Origin: Magallana gigas
Lineage: Eukaryota
NCBI RefSeq assembly: GCF_963853765.1
Contig: NC_088854.1
Location: 18,166,001 to 18,230,000 of the forward strand
Direction of reading: 5' to 3'
DNA: 64,000 nt
The translations under genes were made by a program, and so were the position numbers. The notes under the pieces are model-generated. The model worked only from the letters and a program-made list of their open reading frames with translations. It did no database searches and had not been told where the DNA came from. The first letter of the stretch is position 1, and every line of letters starts with the position of its first letter. Positions 1,205-64,000 of the stretch are shown here, piece after piece.

Positions 1205-3968
1205 TTATGGTGTTTTAAGGAACTACTATATTGCGTGTTACAATTTTTTTTTTTTTTAAATTATACTAAATAACTGTATCTTCTCATACTGTAAACAAAT
1301 TGTATTCGACGATTTTTGGCGGAAATTTTCTTAATGAGTTAGGTGGAATGGAATTATTTTTTTTTCTAAATATTCCTATCCTTAAACATATATGCATGTC
1401 ATTTAGCTAGGTACTTACTTGATAAAGCCCAAGCCTTTTCTGCCGAACACGTAAAATGTAATACAGTCAGATGTAATACGTTTACAGTATTTGGTCGAAT
1501 AAAAAATCATTGCTGATGAAAGGATTATGACCTGTTACAGTGACATATCTAACTCTCCTAAAGGTCTCAATAAACATAGAACACTGTGCCGAATAATTAT
1601 GTCACAGCCAATGTGGCATTTTTACACCCGTCTAAGACGAAAGTATCGAAAAATTCAAATGTGTTTTATGATAGACCAATGCTTAAAGAGATTTTAACAA
1701 CTTTTGTTTTTTATGTATTTTAGTTACCTTTAAAAATATATTCCAAAAGGAAAATAATTTTTCCCGTAGGGAAAACAACTTTCCTATAAGATATAAGGAG
1801 ATATTAAATTTTTAAGAGGGTGCAAAAATGCTACCTTGGCAAACAGTGTCAAAGAGAAAATATAACATCTGGATGAATGTCTATTAGGTGTGGAAAATTG
1901 AACAGAAGTGTTCCATTACCTTTGACGATGCATATATTTTGCAATTCAGATTATCTTATATGCTTCTTTTAATAGCTAAATGTGTCTGTATTAATATTTA
2001 AATATCAATACAAAAAATATTATGTTGATAATTCATATCACGTAGGAATACAAATAAATCAAAAAGAATCTTACGAAGAACTCTTCCGGTTAGCTCAATG
2101 TCAAACTTTCTACTTTAATTTTAACCCCTAGGAAATTCTATACTACATGTAGGACTACATGTAGAAAGAAATATGTAGGGTAGAAATAATTTGACTCCGT
2201 CTCGCGTTAATTGTTTGTTATTTCAACATTCATTTTATCGAGATTCCATTAGGCATGTCCTGAGTGGTACCATTTGATCAATAATAAGGCAATCAATGAG
2301 GACATTGGCTACAACATGATAATGTGCATGTATCTATAGTATAGAGCTACCGCCATTTCTGACCCATGATTAGCTGAGATACCCGTATGTTGTTCTACTT
2401 GTTGATCTATAGAAGGACATATACAAAGTAATCCATCTTCTATATCTATTGATGTCTTGATGTCTTATTTAAACTGCTTGATTGTTCATTTTTAATGTCT
2501 CAGTCGAACACATTTTAAATAAACTCTACCACGGCTAAACTGATTGACATTTGATCGTGGTAAAGAACTAAAGATTATCGAATTAAAAAGACCTTTATCG
2601 TATTATGGACGTGTAACCTTTTTTTATCTTTGTTATATATGTAAGAAATATTTAAGTGCAATTTCAATTTAGTAATGGATTTTTCGTGATAAACTGTATA
2701 GTTAATGAATCATGATATAATCTAAAAATCAATCATCACACAAGATTATGTAATTATGCACAAAAATGAAATCAGAAGTCAAAGGAGCCATATTTAGTAC
2801 ATTTGTATGTTTGTACATTCAAACGTGTTTTTAAACAACATGCACGTGGTTAAACAACAAGAATATTCTTTTTGTTCAAGGACTCCATCCTTCATATCAG
2901 ACTTGTGCATGGTCTATAATTAATGCCCCTCTTTTGTACAAAAATATCAATAATGAATGCGGCATTCTATTTGGAGTTGAGGAGAATCCTCGGTAAACTA
3001 TTAACTGCATGTTGAAAGACCAGGATGCTGCTTGGCAAATGTTGATCTTGCTCCCGTAAGCGTTTAATTTCCGCAGATAATACTGTTTATTATAAAGTGA
3101 CAAATATTGACTTGTGTATATTTTCTGTCGAAACGATAATGAAAATGGATCAAAGGCATTACTTGGTGCGTAAGTAGCCGCTAATTGGTCAATGCACAAG
3201 TCAAACAATCGATGATTGCTCTATAAATAGTATTTTTATGTGCTGCAAAATAAATAAAACCATGATGATGTCAGTGTTATCATGGATTTGAAAAAGGACG
3301 AATCTTGCCTAAAGTTTAATTTGAAAAACGAGATTTGTCATGCTGTTTAACGTGAACACTGATAAACCTTCCAAAGAATCTGCTACCTATCTGAAACTAA
3401 TATTTTAACTAAATCTTCTCACTTCTCAGGAGAGAATGACACAAAATAATGTAGATAACTTTCCATGGAAAGTTTTGCTTTAAAGACATTAAGACAGGTC
3501 ATTGAGCGAAATTCTAGGAACATCCACTCGAAAAAAAGAAACAAAAAACAAAAGATAAAAATACAGGCTACAGCAAAAGAAAAGAAACAGTTTGTCATTG
3601 CGTGATAGTTCTACAAAGATAACAATATTGAGATTGTATTGATTATCAATCAGGCGCCATTAATCAAGTCACCATGCCACATCAACATGCATTACCTCGC
3701 GAAATAATTACAAAGAGCCGTGAAATAATTGCAAAGAGCGTAATTTCCGTCCATAATTAAGCAATAACGCTAAATATGTATTATAGTGACTTCAGATGAC
3801 CGGGATGATAATTATTTTAAGGTTACCATAACTGACGTTTTCGATGGAATTTCCTTTCAGAGGTTATATAATAAAATATATTTAAAATGTTTCTAAGTCA
3901 TAAGAAGCATCTCCTTTGAGCAATAAATACATCTTTTTCTGTATCTTTTTTTTCAGATAATCAAAAAG

Positions 3969-57100: not shown

Positions 57101-60100
57101 ACGAGTCAACCTCTGACCTTATCAAAGCCTGCGGGCATGAGTAGCACGTGCTGAGAGTTCAACTGTGTATAAACAAAGTAGGCGCTACCCAGACTGATTT
57201 CAGAGACACCTGGCTAAGATTTCATCAAGAGTTTTATTTTGAATATACAGAAAAAAACTTGTACTTGTATTCTATTATAAAAACAAATTGTTTTGTTTTT
57301 ATTTCTACCCAACGATATTTTTCCCCTGTAATTACCCTTTATACGGTTCTCATTTTACCTTTACCATGCGAAATAGATTTCTTGTTTATCGTAAGCACAC
57401 GATCAAAATGCATGACAGCATGTAATAATGATCGAAAGATGATTCAGTCAGCGATCTAAGTAAGAAATTTAAGAAGAAATAAATTTATTCACATTTAATT
57501 TGTTTAAATGATAAATTACTACAGTATATTGATTAAAATCCATACGATTTTTACACAGAAATTCAAACAGTATTATAGTAAACATTCATGATTTTATTGG
57601 AGGGTTTCATAAATTTTTTGCAAAATTTCATATCAAATTTTCCAACAAAAAAAAATTTGGGGTAGCACAAGAGGTTCAAAGGTTGATGTAGGTTTATATT
57701 TATATTAATAGTTGTTCTTCTTGAGAACTGCAATGCTCAGTATGTGTTATGACTGAAATCATCCAGTTACAAAAGGGGCTCAATGTTTAGCATAAGACAA
57801 TCTGAAGAAAATTTTGAAAATCTTTTTATGCAGGATCTGTTTTACTACATAGTTCAGATATTTTGAATATGACTCCATAAAACTGGTTTTATCATGGCTG
57901 TCCTTGCTCGTGTGAGCAACGTGGCCCATGGGCCTCTTGTTTATTCTGATATTATATGATATACAACAATTTGTTAAGAAATTCATATAGTGTCTATTCC
58001 AGCAAAGGTCAGCTCAACGCCTTTGTGACCATTTCGGCCTTTGATTAGTTGAGGTAGTGATTTTTATTGAGAGTTCATTAAAATCTTGTTATTGCAGGGT
58101 GCATTTGCTCAGTGTAGGAAGGTCCCTGAGGGCAGCAGTGGGGTCAAATGTCCGGTCCATCACTTCCACAAGCAGTGCCAGGTCCTGAGAAATGGCCGCT
58201 ACTTCTGTCCTCACTGTGGTGAGGAGTCAGAGCAGTTTGAGGTCACACTGCAGCTGGACGAACCTCGTAATATGACCAACTTTGAGGACAAGTACAATAA
58301 GCCTCAGTAAGTGACCGCTAGAATGTATCTTAGCCTTAGTATCTGAAAGCAAGATAGTGTGTTATATGTATATTTAAATGAGCTTTGAAAACAGATAGTT
58401 TGTTAAGATGTTTTGAATCGTGAACTTTTTCAGAGTCTCCCGAGCCAAGATGGGATTTCATTCCAATACTTATAAAAACTTTACGAAAGGGGACAAAGAC
58501 CCTTCAGAGGAAGAAGTTACTGCCACACACAAGGCACAGGACAAGACCATATCTACTGGTAATGGAGACCAGCATAAAGTCACTGTACCAGTATCTTTAG
58601 TGTCTTGTTCCATATTTATTTTCATGTGTTTAGTAGGGTTATCTTTCAATTCTGGCCATCTTCTTTTTTTCTCAAATCTCAATGTAGTTTGGAGAACTGG
58701 CTAGCATTTTCATGTACAAATGGTAGAACTGAGGACTATGCGTTAAAGCATATAATGTATTAAACCTTGTATATTCAATATTCTGTCAATAAATATGGAG
58801 ATATTGATAAACAGTTGTAATATGTTTCAGGCGGTCTCCCTATGGGTCCTGACAAGACAGCTCTAGAGAACGTCCTCTTGTCATTCTCTGAAGAAAGGTA
58901 CCTAATGGTTGTTCAAAAATGTTAAATAGATTTTTAAATTTTAATTTGATGCAATTCTGTTTTTTACATGTGTTTACTCTTCCAGACCAAGGCTAAAAAA
59001 GCTTCCCAAATTTCTCTATCATCCTGCTTATGAAGGGGACCTAGACAAATTTATGGCTATGATAGGTAAGTCCCTCTCGGCTTTACAATGTGTCTTAAGA
59101 ACCAAACAATTACAAGGCTTTGGTTTAAAGAAATATAATTTTTATTGTCGATGTAGCTGAAGGATTTGACATCAATGAGAAAATTGAGGACTTTGACAAC
59201 CAAACACCACTACATGCGGCCTGTATATCAGGAAGTCTACCTATTGTCCATGTCCTAGTTCAGGTGCAGTTGTCTCCCTTAATTACTCTTTCTTTCTTTC
59301 TCATCATCGATAGAAATATGATGTGAACTTAATATTGTCTTTGAACCATTTTGTAGATGGGATCATACATTCATGCAATAGACAAAGAATTGAAAACTCC
59401 ATTGATGTATGCTGCAGAAAATAATCACTTATCCATTGTTAAATATCTGATGAAATGTAAAGCCAATATCAAGCAAAGGGTAAGGAAATTGAACCTTCTA
59501 ATTGCATGCAATATAGATGAAAATCAAACATGCAAATCTTAAAATTGATATTCAACAAATTACTCATGCTTACAGTTTTGAATGTCTGTAATAGACGCAG
59601 TATGTCATTGAAAAATGTTTATTTAGTAAGAAATGGAATGATTGCATTATCAACAATGGCAATATATTAAGCGCCAGTTTTTGATTGTTTTTTTCTCAGG
59701 CTGAAGATGGTATGACAGTGTTACACTATGCAGCTAAAGCAGGTTATGTGGATGTTCTGATGACCTTGCTAGAATCGGATGACGCTGATGTTAATATGCA
59801 GGTCAGTGCTATAATTGGTAACAAGAGCATTGAAAAGACATAGAGGACAAGTATAAAACAAAGCTTTATATCAGATATTGAGATATGGTATAGTGTTGAG
59901 GTTTTGTTTGATGATTCTATAGGATGATGGTGGATGGACCCCCATTATCTGGGCATCAGAACACAGAATTGTTCCAGCTGTCAAGTTCTTGATCAAACAC
60001 GGCGCTGATCCCAACATGAAAGATAAGGTAGTATATTAGTTGTTAATATTAAATGTTATCAATTCTGTCAAAAAAAAATGAAAGGAAACACTCTTGATCT

Positions 60101-62231
60101 TTGAACAGATACATTTTCAAAGTTAAAATTGGAAGTTGTGAGACACTGCATGTTTAATATCAGATATCAAATTGATTAAGTTAAAACAAGAATGTTTTCT
60201 CTGTATTAGGAGGAGAACACCAGTCTTCACTGGGCGGCCTACTCTGGAAGTGTGGACATTGCGGAGATGTTCCTGAACGCTGGCTGTGATTTGGAAACTC
60301 CCAATGAACACGGAGACCGACCTCTGTAAGTAAACAATCCAAAATTCCAAACATTTCCCACACAATCCAATACCTTAACAAAACCTACACAGTCCAAAGT
60401 GTGGATATTTCCTATAGAATCCAACACCTGAATATTTCTCAAACAATTGAAAAAATTAAGAATTTCGTGAACAATCTAAAACAAGAAAATTTCTCACTCA
60501 CACTAGTAATATATTGGTACTGATACTTATGTTTGCTTTTATTTTGCAGGCATATTGCAGCTAGACAGGATCATTATGAATGTGTGGTGTAAGTGCCATG
60601 ATATTATCATACCATTATTTTTCTGGCAATTACGGCCCTTTTGAACTTAAAATTAGGTCCTTTTATTGAATATAGTAATTTACAGTTTATAAGTGCAACT
60701 TCTCTTAAACTACTTTTTATCTGATGAATATTTGTGATATGTGCTTTTTATCAAATTATTTTGTGTATTAAATGCATACCCTGCCATTCATTATGTGTAG
60801 CATTGTCGAGTAATGGTAGAGCATGGGGTATGTGAGCTTGCTCACTTTTTCTTTCATTAAACAGTTTTAATGTTTGTGTTGCATCTCTTTTATCAATTTC
60901 AATAGTTTCCTCACAAAAAATGTTGTCAATTTTTAGGCTGTTCTTAGCTCGTGGAGCTGATGTGGATGCCAAAAATAAAGAAAATGACACTCCGATAGAG
61001 GTACTGAGAGTTGTATCATGTACATACTGAAAGGATTTATATAAATGCTTAATTTTTTCTGTATGATTTCCTGCAACTTTGATATTATAGTGTTGCATTG
61101 ATGAAAACAGTCAGTCTGCTCTGGCTCTGAAGGTCAACAAACAGCTGAAGGGGTTTGCAGCCGCACGACTAGGTCGCACAGAGAGGCTTATAGACAGGCG
61201 AGTTGTTATTCATTCCTAGATCAATGCAATGGGACAGTTTTGTAATATTTTTGTTCGTTGGTGTGGTGTGAAAAAGTTCAGCTAGCGATTGGTTATGTTT
61301 GTTTTGATATAACAGAGATGTGCAATATCTTTCTTTGTTGGTATGATGCGAAGAAGTTCCGCTTTTGTTGAGTTGTGTACGTTTTGGTTTAACAGAGATG
61401 TGTCTAGAGGCCGTGAGAACATTCCTATGGCGGTTATAAATGGTGTGGATGATGATCCAGTGCCCACTGACTTTCAATATATAACAGAGAATGTTGAGAC
61501 CACCAACCTTAACATAAACCAAACCATCAGCAGTCTACAGGTACAGCTTCTGTCTAAAGCCTTTATGATTATGCTTCTAATTTTGTCAAATGTTCTCCAG
61601 CAGTTATGCTAGAATCTGGCCAAACATCTGACATAGCAAATCCACCTATTATACAATACTTTATATTGTATGCTGGGAGCAAATTTGCTTAGAGAAATGA
61701 TGAAACCGAGTCGAAATTCTGATTTCTTTATGAACCAGAGTTGTGCAAGTGTTTTGTCCATTTTTTCATCTTTAAGCCATATTGACTTAATAGGTTTGTA
61801 ATTCTAAAATGGACTCCTGCTGTCTGATTTGTTTCTCTTTTCCTTTTGTGCAGAGCTGTAGGTGCAGTGATGACTGTTCCTCTATGTATTGTGTGTGTGG
61901 CAGAAACAGTGTTAAATGCTGGTATGACAAGGTACGCAATAATTGTTATGAAACAGAACAAGAAAAATCTGGTGCAAACCGAGCCTCTATAATCCTCTTT
62001 CTGTACCAAAGAGAGGGATGCTTGCTTCAGACATATTCCATTTTCCTGTGGATTTTTTTATTTGATGTGATCAATGATATTAAGATAATTTTTTAGAAAA
62101 TTCATATTTGTACAGAATTACCACCTGCTGCCTGATTTCAATATGACGGAGCCGCCATTGATCTTTGAGTGTAATAAAGGCTGTCGCTGCTGGAGCACCT
62201 GTAACAACAGAGTGGTACAGAATGGAATCAC
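51185..62231 (+). CDS. EHMT1: Histone-lysine N-methyltransferase EHMT1/2 (GLP/G9a) homolog, 3'-partial: join(51185..52591,52734..52800,52912..52977,53064..53938,55567..55698,55935..56078,58098..58306,58434..58558,58831..58897,58986..59065,59157..59263,59357..59479,59700..59801,59923..60027,60210..60325,60550..60588,60937..61000,61091..61197,61396..61540,61854..61931,62116..62231)
   Basis: 21 phase-consistent exons (4274 nt). Domain order and sequence match human GLP as recalled: [14 protein letters not shown]...[24 protein letters not shown]...CPHCGEE, ankyrins ([32 protein letters not shown]), pre-SET ([11 protein letters not shown]...CRCSDDCSS...CWYDK...PPLIFECN...NRVVQNG). EHMT1 versus EHMT2 is not meaningful for a likely single invertebrate ortholog. 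Confidence 0.95.
56411..56700. mobile_element. Fragment of a common bivalve interspersed repeat (Helentron/HINE-like) in an EHMT intron
   Basis: aatatcttcttgtcaaaaacc...gaagcatccttaggtagtgtggattcaaatttgtttaaattatgatcc resembles oyster HINE/satellite-related units recalled from memory. Confidence 0.5.
57780..57942. mobile_element. HINE/Helentron-like terminus
   Basis: Ends gtgagcaacgtggcccatgggcctcttgttt, matching the recalled bivalve element end gtgagcgatgtggcccatgggcctcttgtt. Confidence 0.5.
58986..61197 (+). other. EHMT1: EHMT ankyrin-repeat region (10 exons)
   Basis: TPLHAAC, TPLMYAA, TVLHYAA, TPIIWAS, TSLHWAA, RPLHIAA, TPIEC. Confidence 0.92.
61396..62231 (+). other. EHMT1: EHMT pre-SET region (3 exons); SET domain outside the window
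   Basis: [19 protein letters not shown]; [26 protein letters not shown]; [35 protein letters not shown]. Confidence 0.92.
61635..61763 (+). pseudogene. Decayed box H/ACA snoRNA paralog (copy 0), in intron 61541-61853
   Basis: AGCAAAT-CCACC...GGG-AGCAA-ATTTGCT, H box AGAGAA, GATGAAAC..AATTCTGA..CCAGAGTT-GTGCAA..GTTTTGTC. The ACA position reads CCA and three guide elements carry substitutions. Confidence 0.7.
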
Positions 62232-62300
62232 GTAAGATCCTCCCTCTTGTTGTAAGATCTCAAAGTTTCAGGTATTCCTTCTCGTTTTTGTTAAAGTAAT

Positions 62301-62429
62301 AGGCAAATCCACCCCTTTTGAATTTTTATTATTCTAAAAGGGATCAAATTTGCCAAAAGGAATGCAGGAATTTAGTAGAAATTCTGATTTTCTCTGTGGA
62401 TCAGAGTTGTGGAATTGTTCCTGACACCT
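62301..62429 (+). ncRNA. Box H/ACA snoRNA, cluster copy 1
   Basis: Hairpin GGCAAAT/ATTTGCC; H box AAAGGA (62356-62361); hairpin CAGGAA/TTCCTG with upper stem AATTCTGA/TCAGAGTT; ACA at 62424-62426. Confidence 0.82.
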
Positions 62430-62912
62430 AGGATATGTTTAGAATATTAGTTTATTAGATATAGGTTTTCTTTGATATCTTGCTTATGAATGATCTTTTT
62501 TTAAAATGCCTCACATTTTAAGTGTTTTAAATACAGGGGCATATTTATGTACAGAACAATTTTCTCCTTCAGCAGGTTACTGTAATTTATCCGATTCTAC
62601 TTGGATAATGAAGGAGAAAAATTTACTCTAGTTTTCTCACATGGTACATGTATTGGTATTTTCTAAAAAGAAAGTATAAATGGCCCCTCTACTATAAATG
62701 GTTGTTCTTTACCCGACATGGACTTGTTTTACCTTTTATAATCAAACTCATGTGTGACGTTAAATAAATTCCATCAAACAAATTTAATGTGCAAATTCTA
62801 TCTTCCTTTAGTATCTGCTCACATTGGCAGTTTTTCCATCACTAGGGAGATTAGAAAATTGCCTCATATTTAAGGGGGAAAATACTGATCTTTTCAAATT
62901 CTTGATTGCAGA

Positions 62913-63040
62913 AGGCAAATCCACCCCTACTTTTGAATTTCTTCTGAAGTTGGGATCACATTTGCCTACAATAAATATTGAACTAAGTAGAAATTCTGGA
63001 GTTTCTATAAGCCAGAGTTGTGGAATTGTTCCTAACACTG
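62913..63040 (+). ncRNA. Box H/ACA snoRNA, cluster copy 2
   Basis: GGCAAAT/ATTTGCC; H box ACAATA (62968-62973); GAAC/GTTC and AATTCTGG/CCAGAGTT; ACA at 63035-63037. Confidence 0.82.
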
Positions 63041-63355
63041 AACATTAGAAATAGTCATTATTAAATCAAATGTGCATCAACAATTCTAGCCAAAATTTGT
63101 GTCCTTGGTATTTTTCTTCCTCAGATATGTAAGATTAGAAATATACACATGTTTTGTGTTTTTATCCATTTTCTTTACTGGATTTAAATATGTGGTACAT
63201 TTTAAACTTTGCTGTTTATTGATTCAAGGGGCCATTGAATGAGGTCAAAAGTCAATCTCGCTTTAGTGTAATGTGTCAGAGGCAAGGTCTTGTGTGTTTA
63301 CATCAAGGTCGTATCTTTCTCCACTTTCCCAATTTGAATCATATGGCAAATATGT

Positions 63356-63485
63356 TGGCAAATCCACCCCATCTGTAGTGATATGGCTAGAGATGGGATC
63401 AAATTTGCAAAAATGAAAGATTGGGAACCAAGTAGAAATTCTGGGATATAAATATTCCAGAGTTGTGGAAGGGTTCTCTACATCA
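63356..63485 (+). ncRNA. Box H/ACA snoRNA, cluster copy 3
   Basis: Upper stem CCCATCT/AGATGGG; H box AAATGA; GGGAAC/GTTCTC; ACA at 63480-63482. Confidence 0.82.
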
Positions 63486-63555
63486 CGATACTACATTTTT
63501 TTTATTTATAACAATTTTTTTAATTTAATAGAATTGTCATTAATAAAATCTTTGT

Positions 63556-63685
63556 TGGCAAATCCACCCCTTCTGTAGTGAAACCGCTATGGATGGGATC
63601 AAATTTGCCCAAATGGACTCGAGAAATTAAGTAGAAATTTTGGAGGTTTTAATCATCCAGAGTTGTGGAAAAGTTCTCTACATCA
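63556..63685 (+). ncRNA. Box H/ACA snoRNA, cluster copy 4
   Basis: Same architecture; H position reads AAATGG (non-canonical 6th base); GAGAA/TTCTC; ACA at 63680-63682. Confidence 0.75.
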
Positions 63686-63739
63686 TAAATCTAGTTTATG
63701 ATACAGATTTTTTTTTGTATAGTTGTTGAAGATAACCCT

Positions 63740-63870
63740 TGGCAAATCCACCCCTTCTGTGTTGAATTGTCCATAGATTGGATCAAATTTGCCCTAAGAA
63801 AATATGAGGAACTAAGTAGAAATTCTAGAGTAATTGATATCTCTGAGTTGTGGAAAAGTTCCATACAACC
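63740..63870 (+). ncRNA. Box H/ACA snoRNA, cluster copy 5
   Basis: GGCAAAT/ATTTGCC; H box AGAAAA; GGAAC/GTTCC; ACA at 63865-63867. Confidence 0.8.
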
Positions 63871-63937
63871 GGACCAATGGTTTTACTGTTAAGATTACTG
63901 GTTCCTTTACAAATAGCCAATTCCAGTTTAACTGTGT

Positions 63938-64000
63938 TGGCAAATCCACCCCTTCTGTAGTGAAACGGCTATGGGTGGGATCAAATTTGCCTAAATAGAC
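63938..64000 (+). ncRNA. Box H/ACA snoRNA, cluster copy 6 (first hairpin only, cut by the window end)
   Basis: GGCAAATCCACCCCTTCTGTAGTGAAACGGCTATGGGTGGGATCAAATTTGCC, nearly identical to hairpin 1 of copy 4. Confidence 0.72.

What the first reader, a model, noticed from the sequence alone, without database searches (positions are those of the whole stretch)
62301..64000. Tandem array of at least six box H/ACA snoRNA paralogs inside one EHMT (G9a/GLP) intron
Seen: six sense-strand units starting near 62301, 62913, 63356, 63556, 63740 and 63938. Each complete unit is ~130 nt: hairpin - ANANNA - hairpin - ACA+3 nt. Blocks GCAAATCCACCCC, GGATCA.ATTTGC, AGTAGAAATT and GAGTTGTGGAA are near-invariant while apical loops differ freely. 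Stems co-vary: TCTGA/TCAGA vs TCTGG/CCAGA; CAGGAA/TTCCTG vs GGGAAC/GTTCTC vs GGAAC/GTTCC; CCCTTTT/AAAAGGG vs CCCATCT/AGATGGG. In copies 1-4 ACA lies 15 nt after the hairpin-2 upper stem (16 in copy 5). Established: this is the H/ACA pseudouridylation-guide architecture; vertebrates mostly have one snoRNA per intron, whereas intronic clusters are known in Drosophila and plants. Inference: a dosage-amplified guide-RNA array hosted by a chromatin-modifier gene. I do not recall EHMT as a snoRNA host, nor such a cluster in molluscs.
Basis: partly seen in the sequence, partly recalled or inferred. Interest (0 to 1): 0.9.

Follow-up and report, generated by a model that had tools for sequence, protein, structure and literature searches.

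The report
Six-copy H/ACA snoRNA cluster, oyster EHMT intron
One intron of the oyster EHMT (G9a/GLP) histone-methyltransferase gene carries six old, selectively preserved copies of a previously uncatalogued box H/ACA guide RNA. The RNA is predicted to pseudouridylate 28S rRNA, so this is a real feature, but the several-snoRNAs-in-one-intron layout is already known from flies and recurs in this genome.

Summary
Six sense-strand units of about 130 nt lie at 62302, 62914, 63357, 63557, 63741 and 63939; the sixth ends at 64067, beyond the window.

- **Architecture:** each unit folds as hairpin, hinge, hairpin, ACA. ACA lies 15 nt after the hairpin-2 upper stem.
- **Structure support:** 92% of cells pair, against 27-56% when partners are slid, and 7 pairs show compensatory changes.
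- **One intron:** RNA contigs from three runs splice straight across, so all six sit in a single 3,089-nt EHMT intron.
- **Copy number:** BLAST and a covariance model find the family nowhere else in the 564-Mb genome, apart from a decayed seventh copy two introns upstream.
- **Age and selection:** copies are 65-86% identical while spacers are randomised, polymorphism avoids the units, and a related species keeps two copies in the same intron.
- **Targets (predicted only):** hairpin 2 best fits 28S U2691, equal to human Ψ3830 and yeast U2345. Hairpin 1 best fits 28S U1707, equal to human U2339, which is not a known Ψ.
- **Gaps:** no Rfam family matches, and discrete small RNAs were not shown.

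Earlier notes of this scan, which I did not check, report multi-snoRNA introns elsewhere in this genome. Verdict: a new member of a known kind.

The parts
62302..62429 (+). snoRNA copy 1 (H box AAAGGA, ACA at 62424-62426)
   Evidence: Repeat family D1/D3. Double-hairpin MFE with z -4.25. CM score 125.8 bits.
62914..63040 (+). snoRNA copy 2 (H box ACAAUA, ACA at 63035-63037); closest to the two copies of the related species
   Evidence: 130.2 bits. It is 80-82% identical to LA/LB and forms a clade with them at 85/90 support.
63357..63485 (+). snoRNA copy 3 (H box AAAUGA, ACA at 63480-63482)
   Evidence: z -4.9; 128.9 bits.
63557..63685 (+). snoRNA copy 4 (hinge AAAUGG, not a canonical H box; ACA at 63680-63682)
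   Evidence: (134.4 bits). One run carries a C>T variant in the hairpin-1 pocket (L030 2265).
63741..63870 (+). snoRNA copy 5 (H box AGAAAA, ACA at 63865-63867)
   Evidence: 126.2 bits.
63939..64000 (+). snoRNA copy 6, cut by the window end (complete at L006:1939-2067); hinge AAAUAG; hairpin-2 pocket reads AUGGAA instead of GUGGAA
   Evidence: (135.8 bits on L006).
61635..61766 (+). Decayed seventh copy in the intron two upstream: no ACA, and both pockets are altered
   Evidence: D5, D7; 77.4 bits.
62232..64000 (+). Host intron of 3,089 nt, running on to window-equivalent position 65320, and holding all six copies
   Evidence: GT..AG joint L030 931->4021 in the contigs of runs X11, X14 and X1; window position = L030 position + 61300.
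62116..62231 (+). EHMT Pre-SET exon immediately upstream of the host intron
   Evidence: Splice joints and the Pfam Pre-SET match.
59159..60326 (+). EHMT ankyrin-repeat exons (five tested)
   Evidence: Pfam Ank, Ank_2 and Ank_4 matches.

Best explanation
These are six paralogous genes of one lineage-restricted box H/ACA snoRNA family that is not in Rfam. They are transcribed as part of the oyster EHMT pre-mRNA and released from a single spliced intron. Each unit forms the canonical hairpin-H-hairpin-ACA scaffold that should bind the dyskerin/Cbf5 complex. The 3' hairpin pocket (5' strand UAGA, 3' strand GUGGA, ACA 15 nt below the upper stem) is predicted to place 28S U2691 for pseudouridylation. 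That site has the context CCCUAUCUAC-U-A-UCUAG and is the same position as human 28S Ψ3830 and yeast 25S U2345. The 5' hairpin pocket (CCACC / GAUC, H box 14 nt below) best fits 28S U1707, in GCAGAUC-U-U-GGUGG, the equivalent of human U2339. Shown here: the architecture, structural covariation, single-intron location, confinement to this locus, old age with selective preservation, and presence in the orthologous intron of a related species. Inferred: accumulation as ~130-nt RNAs, snoRNP assembly, both targets, release by endonucleolytic cuts in the spacers, and any dosage benefit from six copies.
For: - **Fold:** a double hairpin in every copy, with z down to -4.9, and a matching consensus structure.
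- **Pairing:** 91.9% of cells pair against 27-56% when slid, and 7 pairs show compensatory change.
- **Box spacing:** ACA lies 15 nt from the upper stem in 6 of 6 copies. The first three H-box positions (A-N-A) sit at one alignment position in most copies; copy 5's box is shifted by about two columns. The box is fully canonical in 4 of 6 window copies and in LB.
- **Selection among copies:** pockets and boxes are invariant while whole units are 65-86% identical and spacers 44-59% identical.
- **Selection within the population:** a 1,549-nt RNA-run contig differs from the reference at 21 positions. Only 1 falls in the 513 nt of copies 1-4, binomial p about 0.0025.
- **Orthology:** metagenome contig L015 carries the same EHMT exons (100%, 100% and 98% amino-acid identity) and two full copies in the same intron.
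- **Locus-specific:** BLAST and the covariance model both find only this locus in 564 Mb.
- **One intron:** confirmed by a splice joint in 3 runs.
- **Hairpin-2 target:** at the canonical spacing the top-scoring U in the oyster's own rRNA is U2691. Its context matches the human fragment holding Ψ3830 position for position (PMC6182160 supplement) and is identical to the yeast fragment holding U2345 (PMC5062969).
- **Hairpin-1 target:** the hit has 9 Watson-Crick pairs, with 0.02 of shuffles scoring as high.
- **snRNAs:** no two-armed site exists in the oyster's U1, U2, U5 or U6.
Against: - No discrete ~130-nt RNA was demonstrated. Intron depth in three RNA-seq contig sets is low and flat (3-11, against 35-161 on exons), and the random-primed raw reads gave nothing interpretable over the units.
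- No Rfam family matches; the best hits are ceN41 at E=1.1 and SNORA55 at E=2.
- The hairpin-2 guide duplex is short: 5+4 bp with one G-U, at -3.9 and -1.5 kcal/mol. It is not significant on score alone, since 0.15 of shuffles do as well.
- Conserved letters G76, A75 and A74 and the invariant AAAUU/GAGUU stem base are not explained by that target.
- Copy 6 (and LB in the other species) has a substitution in the hairpin-2 pocket. Copies 4 and 6 lack a canonical last H-box residue.
- The hairpin-1 site is not pseudouridylated in human.
Confidence: 0.8

Rival explanations
1. The units are genuine H/ACA RNAs but orphans, or guides for something other than the two predicted rRNA sites. Candidates include U4, the minor snRNAs, an mRNA or a pre-rRNA spacer. 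Alternatively they act as chaperone-like or processing snoRNAs.
For: Both predicted duplexes total only 9 bp. The hairpin-2 score is not significant by itself. The invariant letters in AGUAGAAAUU and GAGUUGUGGAA extend beyond what the U2691 duplex uses. The basal stem of hairpin 1 is invariant with no covariation, which suggests constraint on the sequence itself.
Against: The top hairpin-2 hit at the canonical 15-nt spacing falls exactly on a site pseudouridylated in human and yeast. U1, U2, U5 and U6 give no two-armed site. No conserved CAB-type motif is visible in the freely varying apical loops.
Confidence: 0.12
2. The units are relics: snoRNA-derived pseudogenes that are no longer stably expressed.
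For: No small-RNA evidence was obtained. A seventh copy is visibly decayed. Copies 4 and 6 have non-canonical H boxes, and copy 6 has a pocket change.
Against: Pockets, boxes and pairing are preserved while the spacers are randomised. Polymorphism is depleted in the units. The units are kept in the orthologous intron of another species whose intron sequence is otherwise unalignable. The decayed copy c0 shows what neutral decay looks like, and the six do not look like it.
Confidence: 0.05
3. The units are non-snoRNA structured intronic elements, such as splicing regulators of EHMT or a hairpin/miRNA-like cluster.
For: They sit next to the Pre-SET/SET exons of a regulated chromatin gene. Weak miRNA-model hits on hairpin 1 have E values of 3-8.
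Against: The two-hairpin unit with A-N-A in the hinge and ACA at fixed distances from internal loops is specific to H/ACA RNAs. The miRNA hits are far below the gathering scores. More distant EHMT genes lack the elements, although their exon structure is conserved.
Confidence: 0.02
4. The units are a transposable element, MITE or satellite.
For: Tandem arrangement.
Against: BLAST and the covariance model find the unit only at this locus, always on the sense strand. Of 19 metagenome pattern hits, 18 are chance matches and 1 is the orthologous intron.
Confidence: 0.01

Closest known systems
[quoted passage not shown]
   Same: Several H/ACA snoRNAs, often paralogous isoforms, lie in the sense orientation inside a single intron of a host gene. 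Release of each one needs more than exonucleolytic trimming from the intron ends.
   Different: The phylum differs (bivalve mollusc), as does the host (EHMT). The snoRNA family has no detectable sequence relative in Rfam. What that paper contains is recalled from memory, because only its citation was read here.
Human SNORA62 (E2) / SNORA6 (ACA6) and yeast snR9, the guides for the same 28S/25S neighbourhood
   Same: The predicted target U2691 is the position of human Ψ3830 and of yeast U2345, which snR9 pseudouridylates in competition with snR65 methylation. PMC1687206 assigns U3830 and U3832 to the E2/ACA6 pair.
   Different: No sequence or covariance-model similarity to those families appears in Rfam at E<=10. 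Here the site is served by the 3' hairpin. The relation is therefore shared predicted function, not demonstrated homology.
Other multi-snoRNA introns of this oyster genome
   Same: Three to four snoRNAs share one intron of a protein-coding gene in the same genome.
   Different: Two of those are box C/D clusters in ribosome-related hosts. This one is H/ACA, has six copies and sits in a chromatin-modifier gene. I did not re-test those notes.
Mammalian sno-lncRNAs (introns holding two snoRNAs; recalled from memory, Yin et al. 2012)
   Same: Two or more snoRNAs in one intron could cap the sequence between them against exonucleases.
   Different: There is no evidence here that inter-unit RNAs accumulate. 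The spacers between copies 3-6 are only 55-70 nt, measured from ACA+3.

Membership tests
Box H/ACA snoRNA | Hairpin-hinge-hairpin-tail secondary structure | tested here: met
   MFE folds of all six copies, the consensus fold, and pair counts against controls.
Box H/ACA snoRNA | H box (ANANNA) in the hinge | tested here: inconclusive
   Canonical in copies 1, 2, 3 and 5 and in LB. Copies 4 and 6 and LA keep A-N-A but lack the final A.
Box H/ACA snoRNA | ACA just after the 3' hairpin, 3 nt from the mature 3' end | tested here: inconclusive
   ACA is present 2 nt after the lower stem in 6 of 6 copies; LB has AUA. The mature 3' end could not be read from RNA data.
Box H/ACA snoRNA | Internal pocket whose top lies 14-16 nt upstream of box H or ACA | tested here: met
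   Hairpin 2 has 15 nt in all copies. Hairpin 1 has 13 nt in the MFE fold, or 14 if the first C-G pair opens.
Box H/ACA snoRNA | Bipartite complementarity flanking a target U in rRNA or snRNA | tested here: inconclusive
   Hairpin 2 pairs 5+4 bp with 28S U2691, a site known to be Ψ in human and yeast, but 0.15 of shuffles score as high. Hairpin 1 pairs 4+5 Watson-Crick bp with 28S U1707, with 0.02 of shuffles as high, at a site not known as Ψ.
Box H/ACA snoRNA | Stable ~130-nt RNA bound by dyskerin, Nop10, Nhp2 and Gar1 | not testable with these tools
   The one reads call used standard and single-cell libraries, and no size-selected small-RNA run could be laid.
Any curated Rfam snoRNA family (e.g. 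SNORA62, SNORA55, ceN41) | Covariance-model score at or above the family's gathering threshold | tested here: not met
   No hit at gathering on the window. The best sub-threshold scores are 15.3 and 12.3 bits against cut-offs of 50 and 45.
Intronic snoRNA gene cluster (several snoRNAs in one intron) | All units in the sense strand between one donor and one acceptor that are joined directly in mRNA | tested here: met
   GT..AG joint skipping 3,089 nt in the contigs of three RNA runs. All units lie on the + strand, as do the exons.
MITE / dispersed repeat | Many copies scattered across the genome in both orientations | tested here: not met
   Only the seven copies at this locus, all on the + strand.
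EHMT (G9a/GLP) host gene | Ankyrin repeats followed by Pre-SET and SET domains, closest to EHMT1/2 | tested here: met
   Pfam Ank on five exons, plus Pre-SET and SET. PDB best hits are EHMT2 at 6e-27 and EHMT1 at 6e-25, against SUV39H2 at 6e-16.

The most novel reading that the evidence does not exclude
The invariant 5' hairpin pocket (CCACC/GAUC) directs a pseudouridine not described in the human map read here (my recollection is that yeast also lacks one at this position). The site is 28S U1707, the residue immediately 3' of the conserved 2'-O-methyl-C that is Cm2338 in human. The six-copy array in a chromatin-modifier gene would then be an oyster-lineage device for keeping this site and the Ψ3830-equivalent fully modified. 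It might also produce snoRNA-capped inter-unit RNAs.
Probability: 0.25. Interest if true: 0.45.

Novelty: new member of a known kind. Interest (0 to 1): 0.35.

Why it matters
- It adds an uncatalogued H/ACA snoRNA family for lophotrochozoans, with two testable rRNA targets. As far as my literature searches showed, no snoRNA catalogue or Ψ map exists for these animals.
- It documents that several-snoRNAs-per-intron organisation extends to H/ACA genes in bivalves.
- It offers a clean natural experiment in selection: six old paralogs, one decayed copy and an orthologous intron, which together show which letters are constrained.
- It does not reveal a new mechanism. The EHMT host is a curiosity rather than evidence of coupling between chromatin and the ribosome.

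Tried and rejected
- **Rfam:** the whole window at gathering, 60000-64000 at E<=10 and copy 3 alone all gave no family.
- **Whole-genome Rfam family searches** for rRNA failed technically.
- **Metagenome pattern scan:** 18 of 19 hits were chance matches in unrelated DNA.
- **My memory-based site assignments were wrong.** I first equated the two targets with human Ψ1849 and Ψ3616. The RNase T1 fragments in the PMC6182160 supplement corrected them to U2339 and Ψ3830.
- **Full-text search for the target strings** returned only primer matches.
- **Non-canonical pocket registers** (upper stem opened by 2-6 bp) gave hits of 9-11 pairs, but at 17-21 nt from ACA, so I rejected them.
- **An 18S reading of hairpin 1:** GGAUCAA pairs with 18S UUGAUCC near the 5' end, but only on one arm, so I rejected it. 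A 7-nt contiguous match to 5.8S GGUGGAU has the wrong geometry.
- **snRNA targets:** U1, U2, U5 and U6 gave nothing two-armed. The U4 pattern found no locus, so U4 and the minor snRNAs are untested.
- **More distant EHMT loci:** L031, L033, L034, L036, L037 and L046 hold no copy and no Rfam snoRNA.
- **RNA reads:** no discrete small-RNA signal. The apparent depth between copies 3 and 4 is poly-A/T mis-mapping, and the high depth downstream comes from a dispersed repeat.

Full report
**1. What is in the sequence**

Reading 61800-64000 and running the repeat finder confirm six direct, sense-strand units. They start at 62302, 62914, 63357, 63557, 63741 and 63939. The window cuts the sixth, and the genome shows it complete, with ACA+3 at window-equivalent 64067 (L006:1939-2067). 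After it the array stops. About 1 kb of a dispersed repeat follows, and then the next exon.

A seventh copy lies at 61635-61766, two introns upstream. It has lost ACA and carries changes in both pockets.

The apical stems and loops differ freely.

**2. Structure**

- Each copy folds on its own into two hairpins with internal loops. Z-scores reach -4.9, and 0 of 200 shuffles fold as well for copies 1, 3 and 4.
- The consensus fold of eight sequences (six from the window plus two from another species) gives 31 pairs.
- Counted against controls, 91.9% of cells pair, against 27-56% when the 3' partners are slid by 1-3 columns.
- Seven pairs have changes on both sides, six of them in the upper stem of hairpin 1. 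Only 0-1 of 500 shuffles reach the observed values.
- The basal stem of hairpin 1 and the base of the hairpin-2 upper stem never vary, so they say nothing about pairing.
- ACA lies 15 nt after the last pair of the hairpin-2 upper stem in all six copies.
- The hinge carries A-N-A at one alignment position in most copies (copy 5's box is shifted by about two columns). This is 13 nt after the hairpin-1 upper stem, or 14 nt if the first C-G pair opens. The box is full ANANNA in copies 1, 2, 3 and 5, but AAAUGG in copy 4 and AAAUAG in copy 6.

**3. Not a repeat, and not a catalogued family**

- BLAST of one unit against the 564-Mb assembly and a covariance model built from the eight sequences (R1) both find only these seven places, all on the + strand. 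The caveat is that only the best 150 first-look candidates were scored.
- Rfam gives nothing at gathering. Below threshold there is only noise: ceN41 at 15.3 bits and SNORA55 at 12.3 bits.

**4. Host gene and intron**

- The flanking exons translate to ankyrin repeats (five exons), Pre-SET and SET.
- The SET exon's best solved relatives are EHMT2 (6e-27) and EHMT1 (6e-25), well ahead of SUV39H2.
- I laid contigs of three RNA runs on L030 (window position = L030 position + 61300). They give GT..AG joints 240->554, 631->816, 931->4021, 4107->4552 and 4630->5021.
- The 931->4021 joint skips 3,089 nt. All six units therefore lie in one intron, window 62232-65320, in the sense orientation.

**5. 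Age and selection**

- Units are 65-86% identical to one another; copies 4 and 6 are the closest pair.
- The sequences between and before them are 44-59% identical, which is the level of unrelated AT-rich DNA. The duplications are therefore old, and the units, but not the spacers, have been kept.
- A 1,549-nt contig of run X1 spans copies 1-4 and differs from the reference at 21 positions. Only one (L030 2265, in the hairpin-1 pocket of copy 4) falls in the 513 nt of the units. About 7 would be expected, giving a binomial p of about 0.0025 (my arithmetic).

**6. Other species**

- A pattern scan of metagenome contigs with the hairpin-2 blocks gave 19 hits. Eighteen are chance matches, and one, L015, is the real thing.
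- L015 carries the three downstream EHMT exons at 100%, 100% and 98% amino-acid identity. In the same intron it holds two full units, LA and LB, plus a fragment. The surrounding intron sequence shares no other recognisable stretch with the oyster's.
- LB has AUA in place of ACA and GCGGAA in the pocket.
- In a tree, LA and LB group with copy 2 (85/90) and copy 4 groups with copy 6 (88/86). This is moderate support for duplication before the two species split.
- More distant EHMT loci were reached through exon-sized gene calls: L031, L033 and L034 at 79-84% identity in the SET exon, and L046 at 91% in the Pre-SET exon. Their orthologous introns are about 455 nt, about 980 nt and absent, with about 1.2 kb seen of the L046 intron. 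None holds a match to R1 or to any Rfam snoRNA.
- The family is therefore restricted to a narrow clade. The identity of these other organisms is unknown.

**7. Predicted targets**

I then scanned every U in 18S, 5.8S and 28S for two-armed pairing at pocket registers that keep 14-16 nt to the box, and compared the scores with 300 shuffles.

*Hairpin 2*
- At 15 nt the best site is 28S U2691, in CCCUAUCUAC-U-A-UCUAGCG.
- Pairing is 5+4 bp: GUGGA with UCUAC, including one G-U, and UAGA with UCUA. The fraction of shuffles scoring as high is 0.15.
- On score alone this is weak. However, the site matches the human T1 fragment 3819-3836, UCmCCΨACCUACΨAΨCCAG, position for position, which makes it Ψ3830 (PMC6182160 supplement).
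- It is also identical to the yeast fragment 2334-2351. There U2345 is a mixture of Um, Ψ and Ψm, and the Ψ is made by snR9 (PMC5062969).
- Five of the six window copies, plus LA, keep the full complementarity.

*Hairpin 1*
- At 14 nt the best site is 28S U1707, in GCAGAUC-U-U-GGUGG, with 4+5 Watson-Crick pairs. The fraction of shuffles scoring as high is 0.02.
- From the same supplement (AUCUUG at 2336-2341, UAG at 2346-2348 and 2349-2351, Cm2338, Am2350), this is human U2339. It is not among the human Ψ sites.
- All eight sequences keep this pocket.

*snRNAs*
- The oyster's U1, U2, U5 and U6 give no two-armed site. U4 was not found.

**8. What was not shown**

The single reads call gave low, flat depth across the intron in three contig sets: 3-11, against 35-161 on the exons. 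The random-primed raw reads gave nothing interpretable over the units. The existence of ~130-nt RNAs, their ends and their abundance therefore remain inferred.

**9. Comparison and verdict**

The arrangement is that of the intronic gene clusters of H/ACA snoRNAs described in Drosophila (Huang et al. 2004, cited in PMC5932544). Earlier notes of this scan, which I did not re-test, report three- and four-snoRNA introns in the UBA52, NOP58, RRP1 and vigilin genes of this same genome.

The finding is real and well formed. It is a new snoRNA family with two testable targets, in a known type of organisation. The EHMT host is unusual but there is no evidence that it matters functionally. I rate it a new member of a known kind, with interest 0.35.

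Noticed in passing
window 61236-61395: An 80-nt tandem duplication (73% identity) lies just upstream of the EHMT exon that starts near 61398. Each copy ends in ...AACAG followed by AGATGTG, so the splice acceptor and the first exon bases appear to be duplicated. This may create an alternative acceptor.
   Followed up: no
L030 2785-3830 (window-equivalent 64085-65130, beyond the window end): The rest of the host intron is a dispersed repeat with internal sub-repeats (GGTCAAGGTCATAG-like). Its RNA depth is very high and the reads are only 90-95% alike, so they come from other genomic copies. It is probably a transposon insertion between copy 6 and the SET exon.
   Followed up: partly
G000:C7:27036800-27101600: About 100 tandem U5 snRNA genes repeat at a ~607-nt period, with occasional 2,162-nt steps. 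Some copies carry variant loop sequences.
   Followed up: partly
G000:C4:18981700-19061500 (L047): At least 31 tandem repeats of 2,103 nt each carry one U1 and one U6 snRNA gene.
   Followed up: partly
G000:C10:11000-58000 (L029): An rDNA array lies at the very start of contig C10 on the minus strand, with a period of about 11.4-11.8 kb. It holds a complete 18S (1,821 nt), 5.8S and 28S (3,782 nt).
   Followed up: partly
L031 7401-8272: In a distant EHMT ortholog, the intron after the exon encoding ...DDSYLFDLDNR holds about 19 tandem 46-nt units. These units translate like the second half of that exon, which suggests an exon-derived minisatellite.
   Followed up: no
window 61689-61775: The decayed copy c0 gives a weak full-length match to the plant box C/D family snoRR31/Z110/Z27-type model snoR31_Z110_Z27 (24.6 bits, E=3.5), because its hinge reads AAUGAUGAAACC. 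I take this as chance.
   Followed up: no
L030 2265 (window 63565): One RNA run carries C>T at the ninth base of copy 4, inside the hairpin-1 pocket (CCACC becomes CUACC). It is the only variant within copies 1-4 among the 21 differences on the X1 contig.
   Followed up: partly
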